The notes below the pieces were generated by a model. That model ran no database searches, was not told the origin of the DNA, and worked only from the letters and a program-made list of their open reading frames with translations. Both the position numbers and the translations under genes were made by a program. Positions 13,140 through 38,714 of a stretch of 64,000 bases of DNA are shown one piece after another (the stretch's first letter is position 1; every line of letters starts with the position of its first letter). Origin of the DNA: Aplysia californica (taxonomy: Eukaryota). The stretch is from assembly GCF_000002075.1 (NCBI RefSeq), contig NW_004797470.1, forward strand, positions 899,491 through 963,490, in the 5' to 3' direction.

Positions 13140-16100
13140 TATTATCTTTATTATTAGTATTAGTATTATTGTCATATTATCATTATTATCATCATTGTTA
13201 TTATTAATGCGAAATGAAATGCGAGACAGGCAGAGTAATGAAGAAGTACGAGCGTACGAGCAGCTATCGGCACTGAGGCCTGCCTGCGTTACATAGAAAA
13301 ACAGAGGATAAAATGGTTTGGCCACCTGTTACGCATGTCACCTGACCAGCCAGTCTCGAGAGCCTACAACACCAAGCACTGAGGCTATAAAGGAAGAGAA
13401 AGGCCATGCAAAAGGTGGATCGAGGGTGTCAAGGAAACCCTAAGAAAACATAACATCACAACTGAAAGAGCTACGGAGCTGGCCTACCATAGAAAACTGC
13501 ATCTCCCCTCGACGCTTAACGGCAACAGAGGATGAAATAGTAAAGTAAGTATTATTATTATTATCATCATTGTTTATATTATTATTATTATCATAATTAT
13601 TATTACGTACCTGCAGTTAGGCCCAAATGTGACGTCGTCGATGGCCAGAGCGTTGCCCGGCCCACCCGGGGTGGCTTGGATCATCAGCTGGAAGGGTTGG
13701 TCAACACTGGCAGCCACAGACATCTGTTGCCAGTACGTGCCCGGTCTGGCGTCAGGTAGGGGCAGATCTTTGTCCGGCCCCAGGTTGCTGTGTGTGCGGT
13801 AGCTCACTTTCAGACGTTGGCTTGAGCTCGGAATCAAGGCGAAGAAGCGAATCTGAGAGATGGGATACATTGATAATAAGATAATACAATTTATAAATTA
13901 TGCCCCACTGAATAAAGCGGCACTGCGCTTTCACTCTGCAAGTTTGGCGATGCAAAATAGAATACGGAAACAAAGACCTTATCAAAATCAAACACAGAAA
14001 CAAACCGAGAGACTGACGTCAACGGAGTAACCAATACAAAAAGAATCGAAGCTGAAATATGGGATAAAATAATAAAGTAAAAGAAATTTATAAATGCCCT
14101 ATTAGAATAATGCGACAGAGTAGCTCACTTGAAGAGTCGAGCTTCGAATCAAGGCAGAGACGCAAATTTAAGAGACGAGATAAAATGCTGGTAAGATAAT
14201 GTTTCTTTTTTAAAAATTATTATTTTAATTTTGTCATGAGAAGAATATAGGCACTATAAAGGTAATTGTCTGCTGGTAAAAATTAAGGCAGACGAACAAA
14301 CAGAAACAACAGAGGGAAAAAGAAGAAGTTGTACCCGTCAGTGACACCCTATAACCGCACAAAAATAAGATAATGAAATTCATAAATGCATAATTGGAAT
14401 AAAGCCACAGTATGTTTTTAGACTGTAGTCTGATGCAAAATATGCAGAAAGAAACGTCTTACGTAAAAACAAACACACACATAGAGAGAGTGACATCAAA
14501 GAATCACAGATAATTTGGTGGGTGTATTTATGTGGGCATGCACACGTGTTTATCTTGACTTCTCTTTAGAGTGAGACAAAATGTTTGATAAATCTGTATT
14601 TGAATAAAAATGTTTTCCTGGATATATCTGGCTTTGCACAAAAATTTAAAAAATACAATCTGCTGCAACTCCTAAAAAGTCACTGAGAATTTGAATACTA
14701 TCTAATTCATTTTTCGAAAGTACAAAGGTTACTTAAATTAGACCATAGATTTGTAAGTGAAATGAATAAAAGAGTTCTCTTGCTCTTAAAACCTGAAATT
14801 TTAGAAATATCTGTTTTAGCATCTAAACCCTTCATATTAACACAAAGGCTCACCTGACACACGCTGTTGTTGGTGGGTGCCAGCGGCTTGGACAGTAGCC
14901 AGGCTGTGTCCGTGGACTTCGCTGAAGGTCCGGCCTGCACGTAGAGATAATGACCAGAGCTGAGGCCGGTACTGTGGTCCACACCGGGCAGGCCACGCGC
15001 CAGACCCTGGGAGCTGTCCCACAACTTCCAGTCTAGCTGATCCTCTTGGCTCTCAGAGAAATCGCCGAAGGGAACGCGCTCAAAGTTGAAGTGGAGGTAA
15101 CCCGTGCAGTTGGCGGGAGCCTCGTCCGAGTTATCCCCACAGTCGTCCTGGCCGTTGCACAGCGCCTGGAAGTCCACGCACGCCCCCGACTTGCAGCGGA
15201 ACTGATTGTCGGCACACGCAAAAACGCTCTGCGGTACAGCGCAGTGCTTCAGTTCTAGGTTGTCAATGGCGATCTGGCCGGAGAAAGATGAGGCTGGCAA
15301 GCGCGTGAAGGTCAAGGAGAAGGGTGAAGATCTCCGGCCAATGCCCACGTTGGCTTTGGTCCAGAGTCCGGTAGCGTCAGAGACCTGCCAGAGCGTGGCC
15401 GCCGTCATGTCAAATTTGTTGATCTCTAGCTTGATGGTGCCGGCGACGGGGGGAGCCATGTAGTAGCTGAAGGAGAGAAGACAGCCAGTGGCGGAGGAAG
15501 AGAACGTCTGGCTGGACAACTTAGCCACCTGGCCGGCTGTGTTCCCGTTGTTGGCGTCATTGATGTAGGCGTAGCCACCCGTCCGACTGCCATCTGCGTC
15601 CTGAGTGGGGCCTTTCGAGGGGTCAACAGATGTCGGGCTGCCAGCCTTCCAGTCCAGGAGATCTGGTTTCGTCTCACTCCACGTGCAAAGGTCAGTGTCG
15701 AAGGTGCAAACCTTTTGCGTGTGGCACTTTGACTCATCACTGCCGTCCATGCAGTCTAGGTGGAAGTCACACAACTGGCTCTGGAGGACACACCCACCCA
15801 GTGTACGACACGCGACCTGACCTCCAGGACACGTCGCCATGGTGCCCGTGGGCGCTGCGGTTGTGGGAGGTGTCGTGACGGCGGGGGCCGGTGTCGGGGG
15901 AACGGGTACATTGCAGAACGGGGAGAAGCTGATATCGTCAAGGTTCACGTCCGAGTAGGCGCCAATACCTTTCACAGCCTCAAATAGCAGCTGGTACGGT
16001 TCCGCTGACATGAGAGTGACACTGGCTCTTTGCCACACTGACGTCTGGTTGCTGGTCCATGTGTTCCTCGAGATTCTACCCATACTGCTGGTGCTGGTGT

Positions 16101-19100
16101 AGACGTTTAGAGTGCCCGGGTCGCGTCCTACCATCCTGTACCAAAATCGAACCACACACTGCTGGTTTGCGGCTGGCATTGAGTAGAGGATGGTGGCTGT
16201 TGTGTTGGCTGTCAGAGCCGCTGAGGAGTATGAGGTCAAGTAGTGTCCGTAGCTTGAGTGTGTGGTGTGGTCATCCGGTGGTCTTCTGTACGCACTTCCT
16301 ACCCCGGTGTTCATTCCCTGGACGAGTGACCAAGTGTTCCGTCCGCCCACCATGTTCTTCCAGTCTCCAATGCCTTGCTCGAACGTGGACTTGGCGTAGA
16401 GGTAGCACAGCTGGTTGTCCTCATCGGAGCCGTCACAACAGTCGGTGCTGAGGTCACACTTGTGGTCCTCCAGGATACAACGACCGTCGCCGCAGCTGAA
16501 CTCTCCCGCGCCGCAGTCGGCTGGGGGCGGACTCTGGCAGTTCTCGAAGGCAAAGTCGTCCAGGAAGAGTTGAGACACGGAGGAGTATATAGACCGATAG
16601 GTGACCACAATCTGGAACTCTGAGGAGCAAGGAGGAAGCGCCACCGACAGTTTGGTCCACTGGTTGAGGGGCAGGTTCGTTCTTCTCTCAGGCCATATGA
16701 TGTTATCGTAGCCTCCTGCCCGCACGCTGATGGTGAAGAGCGAGGGCTGTCGAACCGCTTGATACCACAGGGAGAACGTGCAGTGCGTGCTGGCTTTGCG
16801 GTAGAATGAGGATAACAGGATCAGAGTGTAGGAGCTATAACTTGTCCCAGGGTCGGGGGAGATTACGTGACCCTGAGGAGAGCCCGGGTTGTGGTCAGCG
16901 TTGATCATTGTCTTGGAGACTAAAGATACGATAGAAGACGCGGAGGAAGAAGAATTCGAGCCTTGGATCTTCCACCCACAAGCACCGTTCTCAAAGTTGC
17001 AGGTCGGTGGACAGCTGGCTTCATCTGTGCCGTCGGTGCAGTCTGCATAGAAGTCACACCAGGCAGAGACCGGCTTACACTGACCATCACACTGGAATTC
17101 CTTGCCCGCCTGGCACTGGCCTGGCGCTAGCGTAGGTCTCAGAGGTGGCAGCGTGCGGCGCACGTCTGGGATACAGCCGGGCGTCCAGGTGATGTCGTCA
17201 ATGGCTATGTCTCCCGTGTACTTTACGCCACGCACCCCCTCAAACACCACGCGATATGTGGATGGGTCGCTCAACTCCACCACTGCTTTCTGCCACTCGT
17301 CTCCTCCAGCGGACGCTTGCGGCATACTCCACTTCAAAGTCCTAGGCCCCCCTTCCTTCATTTCGGTGTAAACTGCCAGTTCGCTCACAGCATCCTGGGC
17401 TACGTGATAGAAGAATCGCATGTAGCAGGAAGCTGGCCCGTTGGGGTAGAACACGGGACCTTTGATCCTGGCAGTCTCATTGATCTTGTGGACAGTGCTG
17501 AGAGGCATGTACAAGAAGTGACCTGTTCTGTTCCCGTAAGTATGGTCTCTGCCCGGTCTTGTGGAGCCAGCGCTTTTGATCTGCCAGTCAAACTGATCTG
17601 TGCCGTCTTGCCTGAAGCCGCAAGTCCCTTGCTCAAAGGAGCAGCCGACATAGTTGCCACAGTTCATCTCGTCCTCCCCGTGAGCACAGTCTTGAGCATA
17701 ATCGCACACCACGTCGAGATGTTTACATTCACGTGACGTGGTGCACGTGAACTCCTGATCTGAGCACGTGTTGTGAGCGAGCCCACGAGAACACGATTCG
17801 CTGAAGGACACGTCGTCAATAGCCACAAACGTACCACTGGGCGGTCTCTTGTAGTCAAATCGGAACACCACCCGGAAACCTGCAGCACGAGAGCCGATGC
17901 CAACTCTTGCCTGGCGCCACTGGGAGGAGGTTCGAGCCCTCCACAGGCGCACGCCCGAAGCCGTTGACTTGTAGTTGAGCACACCGTCCGGGTACAGGTA
18001 CATCGAGAGTACATCTGGGCGGTCGCTGACGTAATAGAAGCGGATCTCACAGGTGGCCTCTGTGGCCCCGTACACCGGAGACTCGAAGATAGAGATACTG
18101 GTGTAGCCCTCCCCGCTGGACACAGGCAGCATGAAGTGACCCACGCCTTTGATGCCCAGAGTGTGGTCGAGGGTAGGTCTGTGGACCAGCTCGTCCTGTG
18201 TAGTGTTTACTCGGGTCCAGGAATACCTGTAGGAAACCAACACATGGTCAAATTAAATTGTAGCAACCCCCCTCCCCGCCGATCAAATTCAAGTCTGTTG
18301 CTGGAACCAGCTTTTTTGTCACGACTCTGGTCTACTGCAACATTATATTTTCATATTTAAAGAACATAGTATGAAGGTTACCATAGTTAAGCCCTCCCCC
18401 CCCCCCCCCCCCCCCAGGCCTCTGTTTAAAGCGTTGTTTCTCGGTTGAAAAAAAGATTGAAAAAAATGAATGCTTCAACTGAACTAATATTATTTGTAAA
18501 GTTGTGTTACTATTTAAATGAGATATTCAATGAAGAAAACGTTCTTCATCAGGTGTGGCTCTGAAGCAACATACGAGTATGAGTAAGAGATATAGCTCAT
18601 TGATTTATTATAAATGTTTTACACCCCCACTTGACGAAACTTAGATCATCTAGAGGGCTGGCTGATTCGATGTAGCCTGGCCAGACCAACCAGGGCAGTA
18701 TTGGGCACAGCATCTCAGCAGATAGATGAAGAGGTTAGAAAATAGAACTTCCACACACAGGAATCGAATTCCCTGTTCTCTTTGTGCTACGGAAAAGAGC
18801 TTGTAACCGATACACCGTAGGCCCCAGTGGACATGACTTATATGTGTTAGATTTTGGCAAACAGTAGATTATAATATGCCATGAAGCATGAATTGTAATT
18901 GTAGAAGTTTTACACCTCTATCGACACAACTTAGATCATTTAGGTGGCGGGCTTCGACCCTGCCGGCTTGAGAGGGATACAACGTCTCAGTAGAAAGACG
19001 GATATATTCTTTTTTTTATTTCTCACACGGAATTGAACTCGGGTCTTCTGCACGAGTCGTTGAGATGTCCAACGGCTACACCACAGACGCTGGTCAAACA

Positions 19101-22100
19101 ATGGATGATGCCATGGAGCTGTACAGATATGAATGGAAATTGGAAGGGGGATGGATTTACCTGTTGACACTGTGGTCTGTCCAGCCACACGTTGAGGACT
19201 CAAAGTCACAAACTCCACAATTCTGCTCATCGGAACCGTCGAAGCACTGGGTGAGGAAATCGCAGACCTGGGACTTGGGGATACAGTTCTGGTGGTCAGC
19301 GCATTGCCACAGGTTGGGGTCTCCACACGGGTTGGGCGTGGTTGTCGCAGGGCTGGGCGTGGCAGTGGGGAAACTGTCAGGGCTGACAGCGCATCCCGGG
19401 GCAAAGATGATGTCATCAATACCGATGTCTCCAAAAGAACCGTAGCCGCGGACACCTTCGATGACCACCTGGAACGGTTGTGAGCTGAAGATAGGGACAG
19501 TTTGAGGGAACCAGTAGTTGCCATTGTCCGAGTTGTCTGAAAACCTCAGCGTGAGAGGGCCGTTGATGGCTGTCCGGGTGTAGACGTTCAGCTTGTCGAT
19601 GTCTCTGCCGTACATGTGAGCGAAAAAGGTCATCAGACACAGGTTGGTCGGGGCTAGGGCAGGACTCACCAACCAGGCTCTATCCCCAGGCAAGCGACCT
19701 AAGGCCTTGATGTACAGGTAGTGTCCGGTGGCTAGTGATGTGGTGTGGTCCACTGAGGGACCCGTGGAGTGCAGAGGCGTACTTTTGGTGTTGCGCGTCC
19801 AGTCAAACTCATCCAGGACGTGCTCTTGGGTCCAGTCACACAGGTCCGACTCAAAACTGCAACGGTGGTAGGCGGAGCACGTGGTGTCCAACTCATCCGT
19901 GCCGTCACCGCAGTCGTCAACAAAGTTGCACGCCAACTTGGGGGAGATACAGCCTCCGTTGGCACATTTGAAGCTGTTAGCAGCCGATTGACAACTCGTG
20001 TTAGGGTCTGGGTAGTCACAGTTTCGGAAACTGATGTCGTCAATAGCGATATCACCAAGAGTGGTGTACGATCGCTTGGCAAGGATAGCCACGGTAAAGG
20101 GAGCGTTGGATGCTCCTATAGGAACGACCTTTTGCTGCCAGCTGTCGCCGTAATCCATATTGGTGCTGAAGAGGGTAAACTCCTGAACACCCTCTTTCCT
20201 GGAGACCATCAGTGTGCCGATGTTTGTGCCCGTCATGTGGAAAAAGAAGACGAGCTCGCAGTTGGGGGCCGAGCGCTGCAGTAGCGGACTCTCAAAGCGC
20301 GCCGTGCCGTACCTGCCACTCTTAGCGTCCACGTACATGTAATAGCCCGCAGGTGCTCCCAGGGTGTGGTCCACTGTAGGGCCCGTGTTAGCGTTGGGGG
20401 TAGCTCCCCGTAACTTTCTCCACTGATACGAGCCCTGTTGAGTGTTTTTCCACTTACAGTCCTTCTCAAACGTGCAGTCATACTCACACGCCGTTTCCTC
20501 CTCTCCATCAGGACAGTCTTTGTGGAAGTCACAGACCATTCTGCGGGATAGGTACTGGCCGTTAGCCGAGCAGTGGAAGGCGTTGAAGGTTGGAGCTGGG
20601 GTGGATGAGGAGCAACTGCCCATTTGTATGGCCAGGTCATCCAAGGCAATATCACTCCTCATCTGGGTGCCAATGGTGCCCTCTAGAATGACAAAGAATT
20701 CAGAGCTGAAGGGTCCCAATGTGACACGCTTAGCATTCCAGACGGCCCCCTGGTCTCCTGACATGGTAAACAGTGTTAAGGGAGCCGTTGCCGACGAAGG
20801 CAAAGTTTGAATCTTTACAGTGAATTTACCTACAGACGAACCTTTCATGTAATACCAAAGGTTGAGGCAGTACGTTGTTGAGACTTTCAGGCGAGGGGAA
20901 ACTAACTGAGCTACATCTCCAGGTTTCCTTGGGAGCAGACTATCTAAGACCAGGTAGCCTCCGTACTTTGTATTTAGAGTGTGGTCAACGCTAGGCCCTG
21001 TGTATGTTCTGTAGCCTCGACCCCGGAGCCAGTCAAACGTGTCCCCTGTCCGGGTGTTGCTCCAAGCACAGATCTCCCCCTCAAAGTCACAACTACCCAA
21101 GCCTGGACACTGACCGCTAATGAGAGACACGTCGTCAATGGCCAGGTCTCCAGCACCGGACCCCGAGACTTGAGCCTCAAACATCAAGTAAAATCGCGAG
21201 TTGCTGGCGACATTCACAAGAGCTAATTGCCATGGAGACGAGGTTCCAACTGATGGGGCGAATGTTTGAAGGGTAGAACTGAGAGCCGAACCTTCTGCTA
21301 GCTGCTGTATGGAGAGCTGAGCCTTGCCCGGCCGGTACCAGAAGGTAAAGCAAGAAGCGTCCGTGGGTGTGAACACAGAAGTCTCCAGGCGAGCCACGTC
21401 CCCGACCGACCTGTCCGGTGAAGTGACATTTGCCAGAGCGAAGTGGCCCTCGCTCGTGCCAAACGTGTGGTCAACAGACGGTGAAGAGCTAACTGCACCG
21501 GATGACGCCACTGCAGCAGCGGCTGTGACAGTCCAATCAAAATCATCCGCGGGCACTTGCATGAATTTGCAGAGTCCGTCCTCAAAATCACACCTCGGCG
21601 AAGCCGGGCAGTCTCCTAAGTTCATGGAGAAATCGTCGAGAGCTATATCCCCATTGTTATCAGCTGTCTCAAGGGCCTGCGCTGTGAGGAAAGCTGTGGC
21701 TCCGATCATGTCTTGTACGTGAACTTGCACAAACTTCCACTCAGGCCCTTGTGTGCCGACACGTGTCCACAAGAGGTCACTGTTCCCGCCTGGGCTGCTG
21801 GCGTTGACGTACAGGCTGAGCCGCCCGACGCTAGACCCATACATATAGTACCAGAATTTGAAGCAAATACCGCCAGTGGGTATGGTCACTGTGGGGCTGA
21901 CGAGCCTGGATGTTCCGCTACGCCTGAGTGTGCTGGGTCGGTAGATATAGTGTCCGAGAGCGTTGTTGTACGTGTGGTCAGCAGTCGGACCTGTTGCCGT
22001 GCTGGGGGTTCTACCGGCTCGGACCAACCAGTCCTGATCATTGCTTGGATCTTGTTTCCACAGACAGAACTGGCTCTCAAAGTTACAGTCCAGCTTGGTT

Positions 22101-25100
22101 GCTGCATAGGTCGGAGGGATCGTGGATGGAGGAGGTGTGGTGGACAGTTTCTGTTGGCCACCACAGGGGAAGCTGAACAGATGTATGTCATCTATGGCAA
22201 TATCTCCCGAATAGTTGCCACCATACACGCCCTCGAAGATGTACTCAAACATCTGAGAAGAGTGGACTGTGACCTGCCCTTTCTGCCATGAGTTCCCTTG
22301 ATTGTTGCTCAGAGCCCACACCAACGTCTTCAGGCTGCTGCCAAGCAGTTTTGTGTAGATGTTGAGCGTGCCGATACCGGCCCCGTACATGTGGTACCAG
22401 AACTCCAAACAGCTGCCCGTAGTGGCCGGGATGGGCTCACTCTGAAGCCAGGCACTGTCTCCCAGTTTGTGGCTGCCCGAAGTCTCAATGTACAAGTACT
22501 GCCCTTGTTTAGTGCCCGTCGTGTGGTCTACTTGTGGGCCCGTGTTGGAGGACAATGTACCTGCACTGTCCAGTACCCAGTCAAACTGATCCCCTTTCTT
22601 CACATTGAAAAACGCACACAGACCCTGTTCAAAAGAGCAGGAGCCTATGGGTTGACAAGGGAGAAAACTGACAGCGATATCATCAATGGCAATGTCACTT
22701 GTGTAACTTGATCCCCTAACTCCTTCAAATTGGATTTGTAAAGGTTTGCCGTTACCCGAGAGCTGGACGCTGGCTTTCTTCCAGGCATTCTCCTGCGGGC
22801 CTTGTAAGCTCCAGAGTTTGACGCTGGCTGAGCCAGGTGTCTTCTTGTAGACATTGAGCGTGCCCATGCCGCGGCCGTACATATGGTACCAGAAGGTGAG
22901 GCAGCCGCCGTACACTTTGTAGTCTTTGCTGGTGATGACTGCAGTGTCTCCAGTCGCACGTCCTGAGGCCTCGATGTAGGCGTACTTCCCCACAGATGAG
23001 CCGTGAGTGTGGTCAGTTCCTGGACCCGTGCCACTAGAGCTTGTTGCGTTGTTACCAAGTGTCCAGTTAAACACATCGTTCGTCTCCTGGGTCCAATCAC
23101 AGAATCCAGACTCAAAGGTGCATTCCTTGAGAGCTGGACAATCACCTCTCTTGGTGGTGATGTCATCGATGGCTATATCTCCCTGGTAGCCGGTGCCGAT
23201 AGTAGCCCGGAACGTGAGACCATACGAACTGCTCATGTTCATAAATACGTTCATTTGTACCCATTTGTCTGCCTGCGTGCCAGATAGAGACCAAAGGATG
23301 TCGGCTTTGCGAGCGTAAGGGCTAGTGGATAGTAGCTGCAGCGACCCAATGTCTTCTCCATGCATGTGGTACCAGAAGGACAGGCAGTAGCCAATCAGGT
23401 CTGTGGGCGGCAGTGTTGGGCTCACTAGGTCCGCCGTTTCGTTTTGTTTTCTAGGTGAAGAACTTTCAATGTACATGTACTTCCCACTACCCCCGTGAGC
23501 GCTCGGAGGTCCAGTGCCAGAGCTAGAGGTCGGGCCACTATTGTGCGTCCAGTCAAACACGTCACTGTTGGTCTGCTTCCAGTTGCAAGTGTTCTGGTCA
23601 AACGAACACGCCACAGACGGGGGTGCCTTGGTCCGGCTGCAGGACGAGAAAGAAACGTCGTCAATAGACGCAAAGTTCTGGAGACTCGCACTGCTCTGTG
23701 CTGTACTCGAGGCTTCATACCAGATCTCGATCTGGGTACCAGACGGAAGTTCTCCAACAGTACGTCCAAGGTAAACGTACGCAGCGCGCCAATTTCCGCT
23801 AAATGTCGGAGAGGACCACACACGGGTTTTAACACCTTTGTAGGGCACCATGACCGACAGTCTTCCAGCTGCGGGATTTATGTGGTAGAAAAACTTCATA
23901 ACACACAGAGTGGACGTACCGCCAAGCACGGGGGAGCGAAGGATGGCCGGGGAGGACAGGATGCCGTAAGCTGGTTTTATGTAAGCATAGTGGCCGTTGG
24001 CGTTGGCCAGCGTGTTATCTATTGAAGGCCCCACTTTACCCATGTCTGCTGGTTTGCTCAGATCCCATCTATAGTGTCCAGAGCTGGCGTGGAACCAGCC
24101 GCACATGGTTCCATTCTCGAAGTTACAGGTGCCACACTGAGCCTCATCTGAGCCGTCAGAACAGTCTGGATCAAAGTTACAGACCTTGTTGAGTCCCACA
24201 CACTGGCCGCTGGTACATTGGAAGTATGTCGAGTAGCACGTCCTTTTCGTGGTGGCAACCGTTGTCATGGTGTAAGTAGCTGCTGGGAGGGTGGTACCGG
24301 TGGCCACTTTACATCCAGGTGAAAGAGTAACATCGTCCAGTGCCATGTCTCCGAGGTAAGAGCCCACGACACCCTCGATAATCACCCTGAAGGACTTCTG
24401 GCTCACCAGAGGGATGATGGCGCGTGCCCAGAAGTTCTGACGGGTGCTGAGTTGGGTGAAGAGAAGCTGTGGGTACCCTGCCTTCTCTGTGAGCATGTAG
24501 ATGTTGAGGGGCTGCATGGTGCTCCCGTACATGTGATAGAACAGTGAGAGGTGACACTGATCCGACACTTGAGCCGGACTCACCACTGGGCTCATTAGCT
24601 TCGCCTTCTGGCCCGTCTTCGCTGGGCTCGAGGTCTCTAGATACACAAAATGACCGGTGTCCAGCCCCGTACTGTGGTCAACTGAAGGCCCGGTATTGTC
24701 CGTGGGGGTTGGCCCCTGGTGTATTCTCCAGTCCATATCGTCATGGGTGTCTTGCTGCCAGCTGCACAGGTCCGTCTCAAAGTTACACCGGTGTGCTTGA
24801 TTGCAGCTGAGGTCTGTCTCATCACTGTTGTCTCCACAGTCGTCCGTCAGATCACACAGGTACACGCGGTCCACACACACGCCATTGCCACAGCGGAACT
24901 TTGTGGACGGGCAGGACGCTGCAGGCTGAGGGGGCCCGCAGTTCACAAACTTTGTGTCATCTATAGCGATGGACCCCGGGGTGGAGTAGAGCCTTGAGGC
25001 TTTCAGCAGAACCCGAATCTGACTGGTGTAGTGGCCAACGTACACTTGCGCCAGAGCCCATTTGGAGCCGGTGGTGGGCATAGGGGGCGCCTTCCAGATG

Positions 25101-25202
25101 GTCATTTCTCTCGAGCCAATCTGTACCGAAACAATCAACCATACAGTAGTTACGCTGCAAGAGGCTCAATAATTATAATTTGAGGAAAAGTTAGTACACA
25201 CA

Positions 25203-25280
<78 letters not shown>

Positions 25281-28200
25281 ACTGAATAACTATCGCAATT
25301 ATAATAGAGTATTTACAATACATAAACACAAGGCAACAGGAACAATAATGTCAAAACTGAACTGAGAAAAAAAGGAACAGAGAAAAATGCATGTATCACA
25401 AGATCATGGAAATAAGCATATACAAAAACAAGTAATGAGGTCAAGAAACGAGATTAATAAAGTAGCAGTAAGATGTCTTATCACTCGCCCCCCCCCCCTT
25501 CCCCACTCAAGAAAATCACACTCTTTAAATCCTCAACAGTTCTACATCAGTTGGTTACAGAACAGCCTGTGTTGTCCTTAACTCTCTCAGACGATAGTAG
25601 AAAAAGCATTCCACATTGGCTCACCCACAAACTTTTTGATCTTCTTCTCTGTTTCTTTGATGGATCTTTCCGACTAATGCAGTATCATGTTCCCAAACAT
25701 GGTCTAGTTTTCTAAATCTGAGGGTTTTTCTCGTGTTTTACGCAGCCACAGGACCTTTATTGTCTTTTGGGGGGGGGGGGGGTACTTTTAGGCCTACTAT
25801 TAAATTCTACATCGAACATAACCCATTCGTAACCCAGATAGCACCATTTTATCTTCAAGAGAACAACACTTGCCTCCTCCTCCCCCTCCCTAATCGCCCC
25901 CCCCCCTAACCCCACACATTAAGTCTACCTGACAAAAGATGTCTGAATGTGACAAATGATGAACTGTCATCTCCTCTACAAGAAAACTAACCTGAATGTC
26001 GACAGACAGACTGCCCGCCGGTTTCTTGTAGTAAAACTGGAACTGGCAAGTCTCGTATGTGGCATGTAGCAAGGGGGTGGTCAGCGTGGCCTTGCTGGCG
26101 TAGGGGCCTTGACTTCGTGACACGTACATGAAGTGACCAGAGGTCGAGTCCAGGGTGTGGTCAGCTCCCACTCGATCCTTGAGGTCGTCTGTGTCCAAGT
26201 CCCGAGCTTGCTTCCACCTAAAGGCTCCTTTGCTCACGTCGGAGAAGCCGCAGAGATCTGTTTCGAACGAGCAAGTGCCACAGTGGGCCTCGTCTGTGGC
26301 GTTGGCGCAGTCTGGGTGGTAGTCACACACCTGCACACAGAGACAGACAGAGGTGTATTTAGATTTACCGGCACACAGAGACAGACAGGGATATACTTAG
26401 AATTACTTAGACTTAGAAACTACTACGTCTTGAAACGCACCAGTTTTTCAGAGATGACCAGGAAAATCTGTCTGCAGCTATCACAAGGACACCACTCCAT
26501 TTTTTTGTCCACAAGTACTTTTGCAATAGTCCGTTTTCCTTTCATTTTTGGTCGCCCCCAGGCCTCTCTTTCCACCGAAGACAGAGAGAAGTGTACACCC
26601 ACATAGAAACTATTAAAATTTGCATTATTTAGTACAATAGCTGCTCTGACCCTACATGTCAGGGCTAACAGTGGTAACTTGCTGTACACAGTTGGCCGAT
26701 TTGGTAACTTTGGTGAGCAGTGAGAATCACCTGCATAGTCACAGGTATTATTTGATGCCCCTCTTGGAAATACATGGCATGTTGGTGGCGGGTACGAAAA
26801 TGCTAGCATCTGATAGATAACAAAATTGGACGCTGTGGCAATAGGAGGGTTGACAAGCACTAATTTACAATATTTAAAGGATGATAGCTGTTTTGAGACT
26901 GCCTGTCAAGGCTAACAGTAGTCACAAGCTGTACAAGGAGAGAACGCTTTTGTAATTCTTCAATCATGTTTAACATCCCCTTTGATACACTTCAAATCAC
27001 TCTAGGACTTTTGAATCTCCATAAAGGCCATAAACATCTTGCCCTCGTTGGAGAAATAGACAGCAAAAGAGACAGAGGTACACAAAGAACAGTTTCTTGT
27101 AAGATATTATAGTTAGAAAATCATACCTTCTTGTAACATATTTCAGTTCCCATTCGTTTCAGTTCCCTTTAAGACCTTGAAGGATATTTTAGTTCCCATT
27201 CATACCTTCTCGTAAGATATTTTAGTTCCCAATTATATACCTTCTTTTAAGGTATTTTAGTTCCTATATAATTAGATCTTCCTGTAAGATGTTTTAGTTC
27301 CCATTCATACCTTATAAGATGATTTAATTCCCATGCATACCTTGTAAGATTTTTTAGTTTCCAAACTTACTACGTAAGTATTTTAGATTCCAATCGTTTC
27401 TTGTAAAATATTTTAGTTCCTTATCATACCTTCTTGTAGGATGTTTTAGTTTCCAATCGTACCTTAAAGTGGAATATTTCAGTTCCATTTAACCATTCTT
27501 GTTGGACACTTAAGTGTCCATTCCTACCTTGCTGTGAGATATTGTACTTCCATCTCCACAAGTGAAACTATCCGGTGGCTTTACGCAGCGTCCAGAAGTG
27601 AGTTGTATGTCATCAATAGCCATATCGCTGACGGACGGGTCGCCAACTACTCCCTCAAACATCAGGCTGTACGGACTTGTGGAAGAAATATCAACCTGCC
27701 CGAGACAAAAATACGAGGTAAAAAAAATATCAAGTCACAAGCATAAAAATACATAAACATAGGGATATATCTTCAAATTCATAATAAAAATAATGCCTAA
27801 TAATATTAATAATAATGATAATAATAACAATAATTTTTTACAAATAATAATNNNNNNNNNNNNNNNNNNNNNNNNNNNNNNNNNNNNNNNNNNNNNNNNN
27901 NNNNNNNNNNNNNNNNNNNNNNNNNNNNNNNNNNNNNNNNNNNNNNNNNNNNNNNNNNNNNNNNNNNNNNNNNNNNNNNNNNNNNNNNNNNNNNNNNNNN
28001 NNNNNNNNNNNNNNNAGCCCATATCCACGATCTATGGCATGCTCTATAAACTTTACATACAACTATCATTACCCAAATAGACACTACAACACGACTCAAA
28101 AACATTTTCTGCTTCCCGGGAAGTGTACAACTCAGGTAGCAAATAACAAGCGCTCAATCACTAACAAATTGAAAAGTAAATTAAATTCTAATACAGAAAA

Positions 28201-31200
28201 TAGATTAGAAAAAAACAGAACAGAAGGAAAAATACTTAGCTTGAAAACACTCGAATAAAAAGACATCTTTTAATGTACTGATGTTATTTGTACTAAAAGA
28301 GCATATTACCTGTTCATGAACCCAGTTCACGCCTTGGGGTCCGGTCATTGTCCAGAGTGAGGAGTAATGTCCACTTCCTGCAATGTCGTTGTCCCAGTAA
28401 ACAGACATTGTTCCTGCGTCATTACCTTGGTACATCTTCACATAGAAGCTCAGACAGGAGGCGCGGGTGGCCTTCAGTACCTCCGAGTACAAACGAGCTT
28501 TCTCCCCTCGCTTTCTGTACTTTGTGTCGATGAGCATGTAGTGGCCTGGGAAAGTCACAACAAAACAGATAGGTAAAACAAGGGGCGTAGTTAGCTCAGT
28601 TGGTAGTTTGCTGGACTGAGGGACTTCGAGCTAATATTATTGTGTCTTATAATTGTAGTAGTCTAACAATACGACAATATACAAAAACTTATGATTTGAT
28701 CTTCACAATCCATCTAGCACTGTGTTAATGTCCAGGGACTTAAATTCTCCTTCTGAGCGACCCCCTTACATAAAGGACAGGCCTGTACACAGCAGCTCAC
28801 CTAAGCTGGTCCGCAGCGTGTGGTCAGATGTAGGTCCACTCTGTGCATAAGAACTGCCTTGTCTGATCTCCCAGTCAAAGTCATCTCCCGGTACACTGTT
28901 GTAATAGAGACAGGGTCCGTTCTCAAAGTCGCAAGTGGCAGGAGGGGGGCAGGCCCCGAGGACAACTGATACATCATCAATGGCGATGTCGCTGGTCACT
29001 GAGCCACCAAGCACTCCTTCAAACACAACCTGAATAGCAAAAAAAAGCACAGGGCATTCAGTGGAAGCAGAGAAATAAACAACACAGCAATATTTAACCA
29101 TACACATTAAAAGCAAGCAAAGCAATTAATAGCCCATCAATATTTAAAACAAGTGGAGCAATTAATAACTAACACCGCAATATTTAAAACATGCGTAGCA
29201 ATAAATAACACAACAATATTTAAAGCATGAAGAGCAATAAATAACATAGAGATATTTAAAGCAAGCAGAGCAACTACGAGTACCAACACAGCAATATTAA
29301 TGATAGCACAATTATAGACAGAACAGCAATACAGTGGAATTTGGTTTCAATGAACTCGTATTAAACAAAGAGAGTTGGGATTCCTTGATTTTTTTATTCA
29401 TAAAATTAAATAAAAATAACCCGGATTCAACGAATACATAAATGAGCAAGCTTAAATTCAATGAAGTTGCTTGCAGGGTGAACTGCTCTATACGAATAAT
29501 CACCGGTCTCCTTCCATACCAACACAGGCGTCATAATCACGCACCCATGTCTTAGCGTGTGTCGGGGTCTGACGGGCGGCCAGCTAACAAGTGACTATGT
29601 GTGCATGTGTCTTGGGGGATGGGGGAGGGGGAGGGAGTACAAACGGTCTGGGCGTGGAACGTCAGTAGAGAAACAAAGACGACGCATTCATTTTTTTCCT
29701 TGGCTACTGATATATATTGCAATGATAAGCGAGTCTTAACATAGATCTACATAATGAATTGCCCGTTGAACTGGAATCAAATGTTGCCGTATGCTAGGCT
29801 CTACCCAGCAACAGAACTCGTTTGGCAAACAATACGTTATAGAAGATAGATGACTCAGGCATGTATTTGAACAAATGGGATCTTTTGTACAGTGTGTGCT
29901 TGGTAGAGTTCAGTGTATTTTCCTGAAATTTTCCAGCAATTCTGTGGTATCAAAGAAATGAAAGTTCCTCTCATTTGAAACCAAACTGCTTTTGACTGAG
30001 AAAGTCGAATATATTATACATTACTTGCTCGGTGCTGTAATTTTCTACACAAAAACCTCATAACGAAATCGAAGGCCAGGCCCAACGATTTCGTTGAATC
30101 CGAGTTCCACTGTATTTAACAATGCGTAGCGATAGACAATACAGAGATATTTAAGACAATCAGACCAAAAAAACAGTGGAGTGATATTAAATGCTTGTCA
30201 TCACACACAAGAGATGCGAGTTCAACTTGCATGTGGGTAAAATTTTCATCAAGTATGTTGGTCTATCTGTTGGGATGTTGAATCCCTCTTAGTCTGGGTT
30301 ATTGGCCTTTACAGACAGGACAGAAGCCCATCTTTTAAATGATCTAAATTGTGTTGATGGGGGCATAAAAATGCTTAAAACTAAAGTAAAGTTGTTCCCC
30401 CATCCGACCCGGACATTGGGGATTGCCTTGTTAGTGAGACAACATCCTGAGCCTTCGGCATATTGTGTTAGGGTGGCCAGTTCCTTTCCACACTACCTTT
30501 ACTTTCCCAACTCGAAGTCAGGTGCTCATTACTGCTGGGTGGAAAGGAGAGGGGGAAAAAATCTGTGTCCAAACGAAGGCTCGAACCCGGACTTTCACTT
30601 CGGAGACGAGCAAGTTAACCGCTCCGCCACCGCACCCTCAAAAAATGCTTACACTGAAAAAAAAAAATCTTTTTATACTAAACAGTGTATGTCACCTGGT
30701 AATCAGCAGCACTATTGATGGTGACAGCGGCCGGCTGCCATTGGTTACCCTGATTCCCCTTGGCCGACCAGATCGGAGAGTAGAGGCGACCGCGACGTTT
30801 CAGATAGACATTCAGTGTGCCCATATTGAGGCCGTACATGTGGTAGAAGAACTTGAGACATTTCCCGGTGGTGGCTTTCTGTGGTGGGCCCACCAGGCGT
30901 GCAGTGTCACCGCTTTTGGCAGGGGCAGATGACTCTGTGTACATGTAGGAGCCTGTAGGAAGAAATGGCAGAAGGTTACTTGGATACAAGTGCAAGCCAT
31001 AAGAAGAAAAAGAAATCATAAGTTTTACCTTCTTACACATTCTTTGATTGATTTCAAACCTACTGATGACGTCACTCCTTAGGAGAATATCAAGGAAGTC
31101 AAGATCAGAAGAGAGGGAAGTAGTACTTGGGCAGTTTGTGTCCTCTATGTTTACTGCCCAAGCAAAGTTGTATCACGCTTACTGTTTTATGATAGTCTGT

Positions 31201-34200
31201 CGAAATGGATAGGGCCATCATCAGTAAGTCACGAGTTACAATTATTCTTATTTGGGTTCTAGTGCAGGCCATTACAAGTGATAATAATAGTCACCCCTTG
31301 AGCAACACAACATGGAACATGAAAGATTTCAAGAAGATTCTATTGATCTTAAAGGCCTTCCCGTTCATCCACACAATATAATAAAAGACTCAACAAATAA
31401 GTAAATTGGAGCAGCACTTCAGATGCACAAACTTTAATAAAAGAACAAGAAAGAAAAGAATAGTCTCTGTAGATGCTTGACATCTCCATCGACACTATTT
31501 AGATCCTCTAGGAGACCTACTGCTTCGACCAAAACAGTCAGGGCCAACCTGAGCTGAGAGGGATATAACGTACTACCAGAAAGACGAAGATACTCAATAC
31601 AAATCCTCTGAATGCAACACCAATAAAGTGCCTAACCACTACACCACATATGCAGAGTATTTAAACTACAACAGAATCCGCCCTAAAGATCACCTGTCCA
31701 AGACAATCACTCGTACAAATGGCCACTTATCATTTTGATTTTTTTTTTATGACCACTTCTTATTTCCCTCTTGAATTTTAAAAATATTATAATGGCATTG
31801 CCCGAGATGTCTACCTGTCTAAAACAATCACTTTACTCTTACACAAAGGGAGGTCTTTTCGGACAATTTTTGGGGGGAAAAAGGAGAGAAAAGCTGACCT
31901 GTGGAAGTGCCGTAGGTGTGGTCACTGGATGGTCCGGTGCTCCCCGATGGTGTGCGTCCACTGGTTTGTGTCCAGTTGAGTGTGGCCAGATTGTCCTGGC
32001 TAAAGCCACAGATGCTCACGTCTTCAAAGTCACATACACCTGGTGGAAAAAAGAAGATACAATAGCAACTAGACATCAAACTTTTCATCCACTCAGTTTT
32101 TAAGTAAAATGCAGTCACTCAAATTATAAATCAATGGTGTTATGCTTTAACCGCCTCGTAAATTGCTTGGAAAAATCATTGAACACATGCCCTCCAAAAA
32201 AAGGGGGGAAACCCCGTCTTTTTCTTCAAGTGAAGAGAAAGCAAAAAAGTTTGCCAAGTACTTTTATACTATTTATAGTGCATGCAGATTTCTGCCCACA
32301 CAGGAATTGAACTCAAGTCTCCCGCATGCAATAGCAACTGCAAGCTCATGCTCAGTAATTAACCGAAGACCCATAGATAAACCTCTGTAAAGTTTACAAA
32401 AGAAAAAGAGAGTTATTTGGTGTCAGCACTTATCTTTGTCACTGCTTTCACAATATTGATATGGTAAAGCTCAAAGAAAGACTGGAGTGAACAATCAACT
32501 TGGATTTTTTATTGCTATGGACTTATTAACAATCATTTAGTGATGAGAGAAAGCAAAAAAAGCAATCAGAATTTTCAAACAACAGAGGGAGAGAAAAGAA
32601 GTAGGGTGTACTAGTGGCAGACAACCAATGTCAGAGCTGGCGAGCCTTTTCTAAAATTAATACATCTCTATCACCTCAAAGTTATGCACAATTTGGCCGC
32701 AGGATTACCTCCATATTCCAAACAAGTTCCCGGATGTGTGGAGATATCATCAATGGCTGTATCCCCCAGGTAGCTTCTTAGCATCACAGCTTCAAAAACC
32801 ATCTGCAATTTAAAAAACAAAAATTTAATTAAACTTACATAATTTATATAAAACAACAAATGTCTACGTTCGAAATGTACTCAGTCAAGAGAATACATGT
32901 GAGGCATCATGGTGAAATCAGGCGCTCGTCAAAATAGTGAAATTGGAGAAATCAGCATTTTCCCGTCGTTTCGGCTATTTTTACACATGTATATGGCTTT
33001 TGGTTCATTGAAGTCCTGTTACAAACACATTTCTAAATAGATTTTACTGAATATCTATGATTAAAGGCACAAAAAGTATATATTTTCACTTTCCCATTTC
33101 TCTCAAGCTATGGAAATCATCAAACTTTGGCAGCCATTTTCTCGCTGAATTTACCTATGAAACCAGGTAACCCCCACCTCCTTCAATTGTTCAAGATAGC
33201 TTAGTAGCTTTTTTTTCATTGAAACCAAGACAAATGAACAAGCTTTACGTTGATACCTAAAACTTTAAATGCCCCAAGACTGACGAGCGCCCGATTCCAC
33301 CTTGTCGTGACAAATATTTCTTTTAAAAACGTAAAGAACACAAACGCAAAATTGTCATTTTCCAGATGCATACACCACGCACACCACTGGAATAAGCTGT
33401 GTGTGAGACACGCAAAGAAGTATTTTACTTTTACCCGAGAACCAGTCATATGATGGGTGTCATCAGTACGCCTACCTGCATTGTGGAGGTTGGCTGTACC
33501 AGAGAACTCGGTGTGATGTGGACGCTGGCCATCTTCCAGAAACGACCTTGATCGCCTGACCGCTGCCACAGGATAGGGCCAAGAGCGCCTGGAGACACAG
33601 AAAGGAGACAGTGACCATCAGCATATCTATGGTATTCAGGTCTAACAATGTATCTGGTTTCTTTGAAATGTTTTTTAAGGCAAAACACAAAGCCTTACGA
33701 AGGATGTTTCGTTGTTCTGTCTGTGCGGTGGGTTGGGTGGCAAAATGAGATATTTCTCAGATGTTAGCGCTGTAGTAACAGATACATAAAATTTATAGGT
33801 AGAGTTTGAACAATGTATAAGTATGGAAAAATAAAAAACATGTTAAACTTGGGGGGGAAAAGGTATCAATTGAAAACTTACAAATTTGACCCCAGTGTCG
33901 TTGACTTTCAGCCAATATTGCCAATCGTGAATTGCAAAAAGTAACTCATTTTGTCAGCCCAGCTAACACATCTATGGTGTTTAGTTCTCACCGTGTAACT
34001 GGTTTCTTTGAAAACACAAAGCCTTATCAATGGTTCTATATTCTATATTCTAATCCTATACCTGGTTTCTTGAAAATCTTTTGGAGACTAAAAAATATCA
34101 TTATTGATAGATTTAAGCTCAAGCTCTAATAAATAATAATACGTGGAGTGTACTGACGAAATGAGTTGCTTCTCGGATTCAAGCTCTTTGGAAATAGATA

Positions 34201-35711
34201 CATCATGCTTATAGGGGAAGTTTTTACAATTTATAAGTATGAAATAATAAAAGACATGTTAGACCTAAAGAATATGGCATCATTGGAAAATCTAAAAATT
34301 TGACGCTAGTTAATTTTTGGCCAATATCTCCTATTGTGGATTGCGAGAAATAACTCATTATGTCGGCACACCTCACGCGTTTAATTCAAAAATGAAACTT
34401 TATTGATCCCGAAGGGAAATTTGGTTAACAAAGGCAAACATACATAAATAAATATATAATCAAAAACACTTAATATAAAGAATATCAAATACACAATATC
34501 ATACCAATACAGAACAACTTCATGAACATGCCATATTGCCGGTTGACACTGCGCAGTGACCTTTATCATGTCTTGTTCAAGGACACACACCAATGACCAC
34601 CCGTCTAAACCCTGTGCCAATGATACTTGCTTTACATTACGTTTGAGTCTGAACTCACTATTCCCTAGGCCACTGGAGCCCCCAGCCACTGGTTTCTAGA
34701 AAAATATTTGGAGGCCAAAGACCCCCAACGCAATAGACGGTTTTATGTTCTAAAATTTTAATTTTGATTAGATTTAAATGGAGCAAAAAGACGGAAAAGT
34801 ACTCCTACACTAGTTATAGTGTGACCTGTAGCCTAATTATTTTTTTTTTGCAATGAGGATTCAGAAATTGATTTCAGCTATGGTTTTACAATAAATTTCT
34901 TGCCGTTACTTTTTTCTGACATTTATGCTCTTCTGACAAAAAACAGCTCATTTTGGGAAAAAAGAAAAGTAATGAGAAGGTTTGCATTACAAAGCACCTA
35001 TTTTAAACTGGTATACAAAGGCCTTGCTTCACAAACGAAGATACAACCACGAAAACCACACAAAAACTCATCACTGACAAGCCAATGTGGGATAGACAGG
35101 TCAGCAACACAAATGAATTAATAAGGCTGATATTCAGGGATGGACACATAGAAAACTCACCATTCTGCTGCGCATAGACATTCAGAGAGCCAATGGTGCT
35201 TCCGTACATAAGGTACCAGAATATGAGACATATGCCATCTTTGTTGAGCTGCACATCCTTACTGAACAGGCGTGCTGTGTCGTTGGCTGATGTGGGGGAG
35301 CTCTCCGTATACAAGTAGTAGCCTGGATAGCAAGAGAGTGAAAGAAAGTCACGACAATGTACAGTTATCTCAAGTACTGTTTAGCAAGGTGAAATAACGA
35401 AAGGTGAAATAACGTAAAGTGAAATAGCTTAGTGAGTTTCCATCCCTTACTCTTCATGCTTCCTTCAATCTGCCCTCTTCTCTCTGTCTACCTCTGTCTC
35501 TCTCTCTGTCTCTCTCATGGTCTCCCCCAGTCGAGTCNNNNNNNNNNNNNNNNNNNNNNNNNNNNNNNNNNNNNNNNNNNNNNNNNNNNNNNNNNNNNNN
35601 NNNNNNNNNNNNNNNNNNNNNNNNNNNNNNNNNNNNNNNNNNNNNNNNNNNNNNNNNNNNNNNNNNNNNNNNNNNNNNNNNNNNNNNNNAGAGAGAAAGA
35701 GCCACATACAC

Positions 35712-35742
<31 letters not shown>

Positions 35743-38638: not shown

Positions 38639-38714
<76 letters not shown>

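What the first reader, a model, noticed from the sequence alone, without database searches (positions are those of the whole stretch)
14854..27695. Paralogous super-repeat units differ 32 introns versus 2: two giant exons suggest massive 3'-biased intron loss
Seen: unit A spans exons 4-36 (85-266 nt each, 32 introns, about 33 kb), whereas unit B has only 2 introns and lies mostly within a 5,960-bp exon, followed by a 3,373-bp exon. Small exons resume for the last MAM, EGF, TM and tail. Known: reverse-transcriptase-mediated recombination with cDNA removes adjacent introns with a 3' bias. Inference: about 9 kb of internal CDS was replaced by or inserted from a spliced cDNA; the alternative is massive intron gain in unit A. 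The gene carries its own paralogous control for this question.
Basis: partly seen in the sequence, partly recalled or inferred. Interest (0 to 1): 0.85.

Follow-up and report, generated by a model that had tools for sequence, protein, structure and literature searches.

The report
Giant exons from ancient intron loss
Two huge exons (5,960 and 3,373 bases) in a giant sea-hare-type receptor gene arose when about fifty neighbouring introns were erased together in an early mollusc, and the intron that now separates them was added later.

Summary
On the minus strand lie exons of 5,960 nt (19161-25120) and 3,373 nt (14854-18226). They encode 16 MAM and 10 LDLa domains without interruption. The paralogous upstream unit is cut into 33 exons of 85-266 nt.

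Loss, not gain, explains this. Upstream introns sit at recurring positions in the MAM domain (column 45 phase 1, column 132 phase 0). The same positions dominate in amphioxus, a brachiopod, an annelid and a crinoid. The crinoid orthologue has the same domain order, but its unit B/C lies in at least 40 small exons.

The loss is ancient. The same block of very large exons occurs in a second paralogue of this genome (one 3,252-aa frame), in Gigantopelta, in Pecten and in two unnamed assemblies.

The 934-nt intron between the two giant exons is absent from all five homologues that cover the site. It lies at a unique position and carries a 7-nt repeat at its ends, so it is a later gain.

The gene also continues at least 100 kb beyond the window, so "unit A versus unit B" is only part of it.

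A spliced-RNA template is inferred, not shown. No RNA reads could be laid. This is a large, clean example of a known process.

The parts
19161..25120 (-). Giant exon 1 (5,960 nt). It runs from the end of MAM M11 (from column ~98) through LDLa, M12, LDLa, M13-M19, LDLa-M20, LDLa-M21 and LDLa, to M22 columns 1-17.
   Evidence: Open frame, Pfam, domain map, acceptor at 25120 and donor at 19161.
18227..19160 (-). 934-nt intron (GT..AG, phase 2) at MAM M22 column 17|18, gained in this lineage. A 7-nt in-register direct repeat, ACAGGTA, spans both junctions. An in-frame TAA follows the donor directly.
   Evidence: Sequence. Five homologues are colinear and uninterrupted across the site. No other intron lies at this column in about 230 mapped junctions. 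The junction repeat is the longest of 39 introns.
18878..19101 (-). Copy of a high-copy dispersed repeat of about 220 nt inside the gained intron. A second, diverged copy lies about 290 nt downstream (roughly 18590-18810).
   Evidence: Own-genome DNA search gave 1,203 first-look candidates, and the 39 scored hits elsewhere in the genome all map to intron nt 60-283 at 70-88% identity. Direct repeats D1 and D2. No tRNA or Rfam match.
14854..18226 (-). Giant exon 2 (3,373 nt). It runs from M22 column 18 onward through LDLa-M23, LDLa-M24, LDLa-M25, LDLa-M26 and LDLa, to M27 columns 1-79.
   Evidence: Open frame, Pfam, domain map, acceptor at 18226, donor CAG|GTGAGC at 14854.
25121..25991 (-). Intron before giant exon 1, at M11 column 97|100, phase 0. 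This is a recurring, probably ancestral, position class.
   Evidence: The same class occurs in M01 and in Branchiostoma and Owenia.
25992..26330 (-). Exon with the second half of an LDLa and M11 columns 1-97.
27528..27695 (-). Exon with the end of M10 (from column 123) and the first half of the LDLa. The intron after it lies at LDLa column 19, phase 0.
27528..60859 (-). Unit A (LDLa-M02 to M10): 33 exons of 85-266 nt and 32 introns. Introns recur at MAM column 45 phase 1, column 132 phase 0 and columns 73-100, and between domains at phase 1.
13611..13852 (-). Small exon with M27 columns 80-153, the first exon after the giant block.
3195..12818 (-). Remaining small 3' exons: LDLa (about 12818-12668) and cytoplasmic tail pieces at 5908-5828, 4893-4855 and 3272-3195. 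The protein ends in -SEA and has NPxY-type motifs.
   Evidence: HMM hit. tblastn of the Gigantopelta C-terminal model P0044.

Best explanation
The window holds the 3' third of a very large gene for a type-I membrane protein. It is MALRD1-like and probably from Aplysia californica.

In the ancestral gene every MAM domain was split by introns at fixed positions: column 45 phase 1, column 132 phase 0, often one more at columns 77-100, and one between domains.

In an early mollusc, before gastropods and bivalves diverged, a contiguous tract lost all of its roughly 50 introns precisely. The tract spans 9.3-10.6 kb of coding sequence, from M10/M11 to M27. It covers super-repeat unit B and the following eight LDLa-MAM modules. 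Introns on both sides were kept.

The most likely mechanism is repair or gene conversion of the germline gene with a reverse-transcribed, spliced copy of its own mRNA. That would have happened in one event or in a few overlapping events.

The result was one giant exon. It is still a single frame in the paralogue on contig C489 and in assembly L012.

Later, in the lineage of this gene copy, a 934-nt intron was inserted at M22 column 17|18, giving the present 5,960-nt and 3,373-nt exons. In the nearest relative (L011) a different intron split the exon about 160 codons further on.

Shown: the exon structure, the shared intron positions, the intron-rich orthologue and the distribution among species.
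Inferred: the RNA-templated mechanism, the number of events, and that the exons are spliced as modelled.
For: 1. Structure. Giant open frames and domain content. A 40-exon model with canonical GT..AG sites.

2. Regular intron positions in unit A and none of them in 17 consecutive downstream domains (Fisher p = 3e-13).

3. The same positions and phases dominate in Lingula, Branchiostoma, Owenia, Pecten, Gigantopelta, the paralogue and the upstream array.

4. Antedon (L038) has the identical order M10 L M11 L M12 L M13(truncated) M14-19 (L M)n, in at least 40 small exons. Several of its domains (M10, M15, M17, M19, M20) join the matching positional clades.

5. Fifteen of 17 positions M11-M27 form cross-species clades, so the block is orthologous among the molluscs.

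6. The block of very large frames is shared: C489 3,252 aa, L012 3,552 aa, Gigantopelta 613+1,565+1,418 aa, Pecten 713/907/1,283 aa, L011 1,968+1,013 aa.

7. The loss is precise. Every domain aligns over the full profile without indels.

8. GC3 is similar in small exons (0.605) and giant exons (0.65), so the block is not foreign DNA.

9. Gain of the middle intron. Five homologues are colinear across the site, the column is unique, a 7-nt junction repeat is present, and an old dispersed repeat sits inside.

10. Simultaneous loss of adjacent introns is the classical prediction of the reverse-transcriptase model (PMC3652778).
Against: - Splicing and continuity of the giant exons in mRNA therefore rest on sequence logic only.
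- The last several introns 3' of the block are retained. A simple poly(A)-primed cDNA model does not predict this. It requires an internal conversion tract.
- The block edges differ among lineages. It starts at M10 column 46 in L012 and Gigantopelta, and at M11 column ~98 in both copies of this genome and at M12 column ~107 in L011. Pecten keeps the LDLa column-19 intron. More than one loss event, or some re-gain, must therefore be assumed.
- No close non-mollusc lophotrochozoan orthologue with this architecture was found. The Owenia and Lingula loci have other domain orders. The lower age bound of the event is therefore loose.
- The species of L011 and L012 are unknown.
Confidence: 0.8

Rival explanations
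1. Stepwise independent loss. The roughly 50 introns were deleted one by one by genomic deletion or microhomology-mediated repair over a long time, under some regional pressure. No spliced-RNA template was involved.
For: The block edges differ among lineages, so loss was not strictly one event. Models of microhomology-mediated and deletion-based loss exist (PMC3698931, listed).
Against: All canonical sites are empty in 17 consecutive domains (0 of 34), while the neighbouring 10 domains keep 18 of 19. Every loss is exact to the codon. The same block is already intron-free in gastropods and a bivalve. Independent deletions should leave a patchwork and occasional indels.
Confidence: 0.12
2. Units B and C were born intronless. 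A reverse-transcribed piece of the gene's own mRNA was inserted in frame as a duplication, so no introns were ever lost there.
Against: The A/B/C super-repeat predates the protostome-deuterostome split. The crinoid has the same order of units, with introns in B and C at the canonical positions. B and C therefore existed with introns before molluscs arose.
Confidence: 0.04
3. The intron-poor state is ancestral, and unit A and the upstream array gained their introns.
For: None found.
Against: Identical positions and phases occur in over 200 junctions across six phyla. This includes the crinoid counterparts of the giant-exon domains. It would need parallel insertions at the same codon positions in dozens of domains.
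Confidence: 0.02
4. Artefact. The giant exons come from cDNA contamination or misassembly.
For: No genomic reads could be laid.
Against: The same structure appears in a second locus of this genome and in four other independent assemblies, each flanked by ordinary introns and small exons. The giant exons are embedded between canonical splice sites.
Confidence: 0.02

Closest known systems
Reverse-transcriptase (mRNA-mediated) model of intron loss (Fink 1987 from my own knowledge; tests reviewed in PMC3652778; internal losses in Cryptococcus, PMC2395259)
   Same: The losses are exact, they affect adjacent introns together, the introns were ancestrally present in outgroups, and the tract lies towards the 3' part of a long transcript.
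   Different: The scale is unusual: about 50 introns and at least 9.3 kb in one tract, where most reported cases involve a handful. The 3'-most introns are retained. The event is ancient (older than the gastropod-bivalve split), so no cDNA hallmarks remain. The mechanism is inferred only.
MALRD1 / 'MAM and LDL-receptor class A domain-containing protein 1/2' and apical endosomal glycoprotein (MAMDC4)
   Same: Alternating MAM and LDLa domains, and a tail with NPxY-type motifs. The best named database hits carry these names.
   Different: The protein is far larger: 27 MAM domains in the window and about 30 more upstream, against roughly 2,100-2,400 aa in vertebrate proteins. It has a 9-MAM super-repeat. 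Function is untested in molluscs.
New introns flanked by short direct repeats (Daphnia population gains, attributed to double-strand-break repair; transposon-type 'introners') - from my own knowledge
   Same: The middle intron is lineage-specific. It restores the reading frame exactly and has a 7-nt in-register repeat containing AG|GT at both ends.
   Different: The intron as a whole is single-copy in this genome. Only an internal repeat of about 220 nt is multi-copy. No terminal inverted repeats were found. Seven nucleotides overlapping the splice consensus could be chance.

Membership tests
RT/cDNA-mediated concerted intron loss | The lost introns were present ancestrally (outgroups keep them at homologous positions). 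| tested here: met
   The crinoid orthologue has the same architecture in at least 40 small exons. Column 45 phase 1 and column 132 phase 0 are shared across six phyla.
RT/cDNA-mediated concerted intron loss | The losses are exact, with no indels or frame change at former junctions. | tested here: met
   All 16 MAM and 10 LDLa domains in the giant exons align over the full profile without gaps at columns 45 or 132.
RT/cDNA-mediated concerted intron loss | Adjacent introns are lost together in a contiguous tract. | tested here: met
   0 of 34 canonical sites are occupied in M11-M27, against 18 of 19 in M01-M10. The block is contiguous in five assemblies.
RT/cDNA-mediated concerted intron loss | A 3' bias of the lost introns along the transcript. 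| tested here: inconclusive
   The block lies in the last third of a gene that extends at least 100 kb further 5'. Several small exons 3' of it keep their introns.
RT/cDNA-mediated concerted intron loss | Germline expression of the gene, and a reverse transcriptase source at the time of loss. | not testable with these tools
   No RNA reads could be laid, and the event is ancient.
MALRD1-like MAM/LDLa receptors | Multiple MAM (PF00629) and LDLa (PF00057) domains in alternation. | tested here: met
   Pfam E = 0 for giant exon 1 and 1e-128 for giant exon 2 (MAM), and 5e-35 and 1e-31 (LDLa). Domain order.
MALRD1-like MAM/LDLa receptors | C-terminal EGF, transmembrane segment and cytoplasmic tail. 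| tested here: inconclusive
   Tail exons with NPxY-type motifs match the Gigantopelta C-terminus only weakly (E 0.14-0.98). I did not examine the EGF and TM exons. Part of that region is masked with N.
Intron gain by insertion with target-site duplication | The intron is absent from orthologues and paralogues, and the coding sequence is colinear. | tested here: met
   C489, L011, L012, Gigantopelta and Pecten are uninterrupted and gap-free across the site.
Intron gain by insertion with target-site duplication | A direct repeat at both ends that exceeds the splice consensus, and an inserted element with other genomic copies. | tested here: inconclusive
   The 7-nt repeat ACAGGTA is the longest of 39 introns, but it overlaps the consensus. 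Only an internal repeat of about 220 nt is multi-copy, and there is no whole-intron copy.

The most novel reading that the evidence does not exclude
A single cDNA-templated conversion of at least 9.3 kb removed about 50 introns at once in a stem mollusc. That would be one of the largest contiguous intron-loss tracts described in an animal gene. The resulting giant exon has since been re-split independently in different lineages by new introns. One is at M22 column 17|18 here, with a 7-nt target-site-like duplication. Another is inside the next LDLa in L011. The gene would then be a natural system in which both loss and gain of introns can be dated and their mechanisms read from the sequence.
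Probability: 0.35. Interest if true: 0.6.

Novelty: new member of a known kind. Interest (0 to 1): 0.45.

Why it matters
Most evidence for RNA-templated intron loss comes from one to a few adjacent introns. Here a repetitive gene supplies its own control. There are dozens of homologous domains with introns at the same codon positions. One contiguous run of 17 domains has lost every one of them. A deuterostome orthologue still shows the original state.

This gives an unusually clear polarity (loss, not gain). It also gives a rough date (before the gastropod-bivalve split) and a minimum tract length for the conversion.

The later, lineage-specific intron that splits the giant exon is a rare, well-bracketed candidate for intron gain in a mollusc.

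Practically, annotation pipelines cut this locus into several gene models (for example 8,562 + 1,872 + 2,446 aa in Gigantopelta). The true gene and protein are therefore probably much larger than listed.

Tried and rejected
- 5' end of the gene.
- P0084 (Paramuricea, a cnidarian) has no gene on record, so there is no cnidarian outgroup.
- The Owenia, Lingula and Branchiostoma loci are intron-rich but have other domain orders. I used them only for intron positions, not as orthologues of unit B.
- The rotifer locus has many tiny introns at partly different columns (37, 85, 112) and was not informative.
- A tRNA-derived SINE reading of the intron repeat is not supported. ARAGORN and Rfam found nothing.
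- An 'introner' reading of the whole intron is rejected, because no other full-length copy exists.
- The LDLa intron of L011 as a retained ancestral intron or a transfer from the LDLa before M11. Its phase (2) and codon differ from the LDLa column-19 phase-0 intron, and I found no similarity between this intron and the rest of the locus. I read it as an independent gain.
- Read-through past the donor at 14854 gives a weak MAM-like alignment. I judged this to be alignment spill-over, because the next exon supplies the same columns properly.
- Literature searches for MALRD1 with 'intron loss', and for the protein name with 'Aplysia', gave nothing. The scan's own notes had nothing on it.
- The joined (spliced) protein model was built only inside local scripts, for profile mapping and trees. 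I did not send it to any database search. Only whole exons by reference were searched.
Full report
WHAT IS THERE

The window is G000:C200:899491-963490. The genome has 927 Mb in 4,332 contigs. Its contig C489 has the length (607,185) listed for an Aplysia californica protein record. The organism is therefore probably Aplysia californica; this is an inference.

On the minus strand there are two very long open frames: 19157-25138 (1,993 aa) and 14707-18243 (1,178 aa). Pfam assigns them only MAM (E = 0 and 1e-128) and LDL-receptor class A domains.

Profiles built from these frames map 16 MAM and 10 LDLa domains in them. They also find MAM and LDLa fragments in short open segments all the way up to the 5' edge of the window.

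EXON MODEL

For each pair of neighbouring fragments I listed all frame-compatible GT..AG combinations. I kept the one that maximised the profile score of the joined peptide.

- The result is a chain of 40 exons, from 63977 to 13611, open for 5,092 codons. Most donors and acceptors fit the consensus.
- Giant exon 1 is 25120..19161 (5,960 nt). Giant exon 2 is 18226..14854 (3,373 nt).
- The small exons are 85-266 nt.
- The next exon starts at 13852 behind a proper AG.
- One donor, near 54039, lies 20 nt from a masked N run and is uncertain. I did not fill it in.

The domain order is: M01 L M02 L M03 L M04-M10 L M11 L M12 L M13-M19 (L M20 ... L M27). Unit B (L-M11 to M19) has two.

INTRON POSITIONS

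Introns of the small-exon part were mapped on the 153-column MAM profile. They fall at:
- column 45|46, phase 1 (8 of 9 domains);
- column 132|133, phase 0 (8 of 10 domains, and column 122 in the other two);
- one further site at columns 73-100;
- between domains, phase 1.

None of these sites is occupied in M11-M27: 0 of 34 canonical sites, against 18 of 19 upstream (Fisher p = 3e-13).

The introns that bound the block lie at M11 column 97|100 phase 0 and M27 column 79|80 phase 0. Both belong to recurring position classes. The intron between the two giant exons lies at M22 column 17|18 phase 2, a position seen nowhere else.

THE GENE IS LARGER THAN THE WINDOW

The 100 kb upstream on the same strand (C200:963,491-1,063,490) hold about 30 more MAM domains in small exons, with the same intron positions and no LDLa. 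The first exon of M01 lies just outside the window. The gene therefore does not begin in the window.

At the 3' end, small exons encode the rest of M27, an LDLa and a tail. The tail carries NPxY-type motifs and ends in -SEA.

RELATIVES

A paralogue on contig C489 has the same architecture. It has the same outer exon boundaries (M11 column ~100 and M27 column ~77). The whole block is one open frame of 3,252 aa.

Database ORFs led to genomic loci in other assemblies:
- L011 (ENA, the closest at 54% identity): frames of 1,968 and 1,013 aa.
- L012 (ENA): a single 3,552-aa frame from M10 column 45 to the LDLa after M27.
- Gigantopelta aegis: 613 + 1,565 + 1,418 aa.
- Pecten maximus: 713, 215, 907, 1,283 and at least 359 aa. 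The locus ends inside the last frame.

All have small MAM exons upstream.

A maximum-likelihood tree of the domains recovers cross-species clades for 15 of the 17 positions M11-M27. The block is therefore orthologous among these molluscs.

Unit-A domains pair with unit-B domains at an offset of nine for M02, M03, M04, M05, M08 and M09. M06 and M01 do not pair this way. This supports the super-repeat, with moderate branch support.

A census of intron position and phase covered about 230 junctions. Column 45 phase 1 and column 132 phase 0 dominate in:
- Lingula (a brachiopod);
- Branchiostoma (a chordate);
- Owenia (an annelid);
- Pecten;
- Gigantopelta;
- both Aplysia copies.

Columns 77, 87-89 and 97 are also shared.

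The crinoid Antedon mediterranea is the most informative outgroup. Its locus L038 reads M10 L M11 L M12 L M13(truncated) M14-M19 L M20 L M21 L M22 L M23 L. This is the same order as here, including the truncated M13. It lies in at least 40 small exons.

Antedon domains M10, M15, M17, M19 and M20 join the corresponding mollusc clades. The others pair with their unit-A partners.

Priapulus and a bdelloid rotifer are also split into small exons.

The introns are therefore ancestral. Units B and C existed with introns before molluscs arose. The giant exons are the product of loss.

The loss is exact, because every domain aligns over the full profile. It is contiguous, and it is shared by gastropods and a bivalve. 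GC3 is similar in small and giant exons (0.605 and 0.65).

MECHANISM

Exact, simultaneous removal of a long run of adjacent introns, with sharp edges, is the signature predicted for recombination with a reverse-transcribed spliced mRNA (PMC3652778).

I take this as the most likely mechanism, but it is inferred. The retained 3'-most introns require an internal conversion tract. The block edges also differ among lineages:
- L012 and Gigantopelta start at M10 column 46.
- Both copies in this genome start at M11 column ~98, and L011 starts at M12 column ~107.
- Pecten keeps the LDLa column-19 intron.

More than one event, or some re-gain, must therefore be allowed.

THE MIDDLE INTRON

Across the site of intron 18227-19160, the paralogue, L011, L012, Gigantopelta and Pecten are all uninterrupted and gap-free. 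Gain in this gene's lineage is the parsimonious reading.

- Both junctions share the 7-nt string ACAGGTA in register. This is the longest such repeat among the 39 introns; the others have 5 nt or fewer. It fits an insertion with target-site duplication or double-strand-break repair. It also overlaps the splice consensus, so chance is not excluded.
- Intron nt 60-283 are a copy of a dispersed repeat with at least 1,200 candidate copies at 70-88% identity. A second, diverged copy follows. The intron as a whole is unique.
- It has no tRNA or Rfam match.
- Without splicing, a TAA directly after the donor would end the protein. The 1,124-codon exon downstream is intact and conserved. This argues that the intron is removed and is not recent.
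- L011 splits its giant exon elsewhere: inside the LDLa after M22, at phase 2, with no similarity to other parts of the locus. That is an independent event.

LIMITS

- No reads could be laid. Places 14197-14237 were kept out of all later searches.
- The 5' end of the gene could not be fetched.
- No cnidarian locus was available.
- The joined protein model was used only in local scripts and was never sent to a database search.

VERDICT

The finding is a large and unusually clean instance of a known process. It adds a later intron gain and a much bigger gene than the window suggests.

Noticed in passing
G000:C200:963491-1063490 (loci L023-L032), upstream of the window on the minus strand: About 30 further MAM domains lie in small exons with the same intron positions, without LDLa, and continuous with M01. 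The gene probably encodes well over 10,000 residues (at least 57 MAM domains). Its 5' end was not reached.
   Followed up: partly
G000:C489:470001-557000 (loci L013-L021): A second paralogue has the same architecture and a single 3,252-aa open frame (544.5-554.3 kb), at 48% identity. It also has a long intron-rich MAM array upstream.
   Followed up: partly
window 18878-19101 and about 18590-18810: Two copies of a dispersed repeat of about 220 nt, with at least 1,200 candidate copies in the genome (70-88% identity). There is no tRNA or Rfam match. The family was not identified.
   Followed up: partly
window 18390-18420: A run of about 25 G inside the gained intron.
   Followed up: no
L011:15779-17972: The closest relative splits its giant exon with a different intron. 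It lies inside the LDLa after M22, at phase 2, and is about 2.2 kb long. This relative also has extra introns before and inside M12, so re-splitting of the giant exon has happened more than once.
   Followed up: partly
L034:28430-29087, 40036-40777 and 54069-54908 (Pecten maximus): Tandem arrays of short, overlapping open segments each match the same part of the MAM profile (columns 31-50, 33-55 or 63-100). They look like tandemly amplified exon fragments inside the intron-rich part of the scallop gene.
   Followed up: no
L033 (Gigantopelta aegis) and L034 (Pecten maximus): Public annotation cuts what looks like one gene into adjacent models: 8,562 + 1,872 + 2,446 aa in Gigantopelta, and 713 + 2,575 + 4,470 aa in Pecten. 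The cuts fall at or near the giant-exon borders.
   Followed up: no
window 14755-14853: The frame stays open for 49 codons past the donor at 14854, and the read-through gives a weak MAM-like alignment (columns 80-111). This is probably alignment spill-over.
   Followed up: partly
window 53709-54019: A masked N run begins 20 nt after the modelled end of the exon at 54173-54039. The donor of that exon and the position of its intron (column 122) are therefore uncertain.
   Followed up: no
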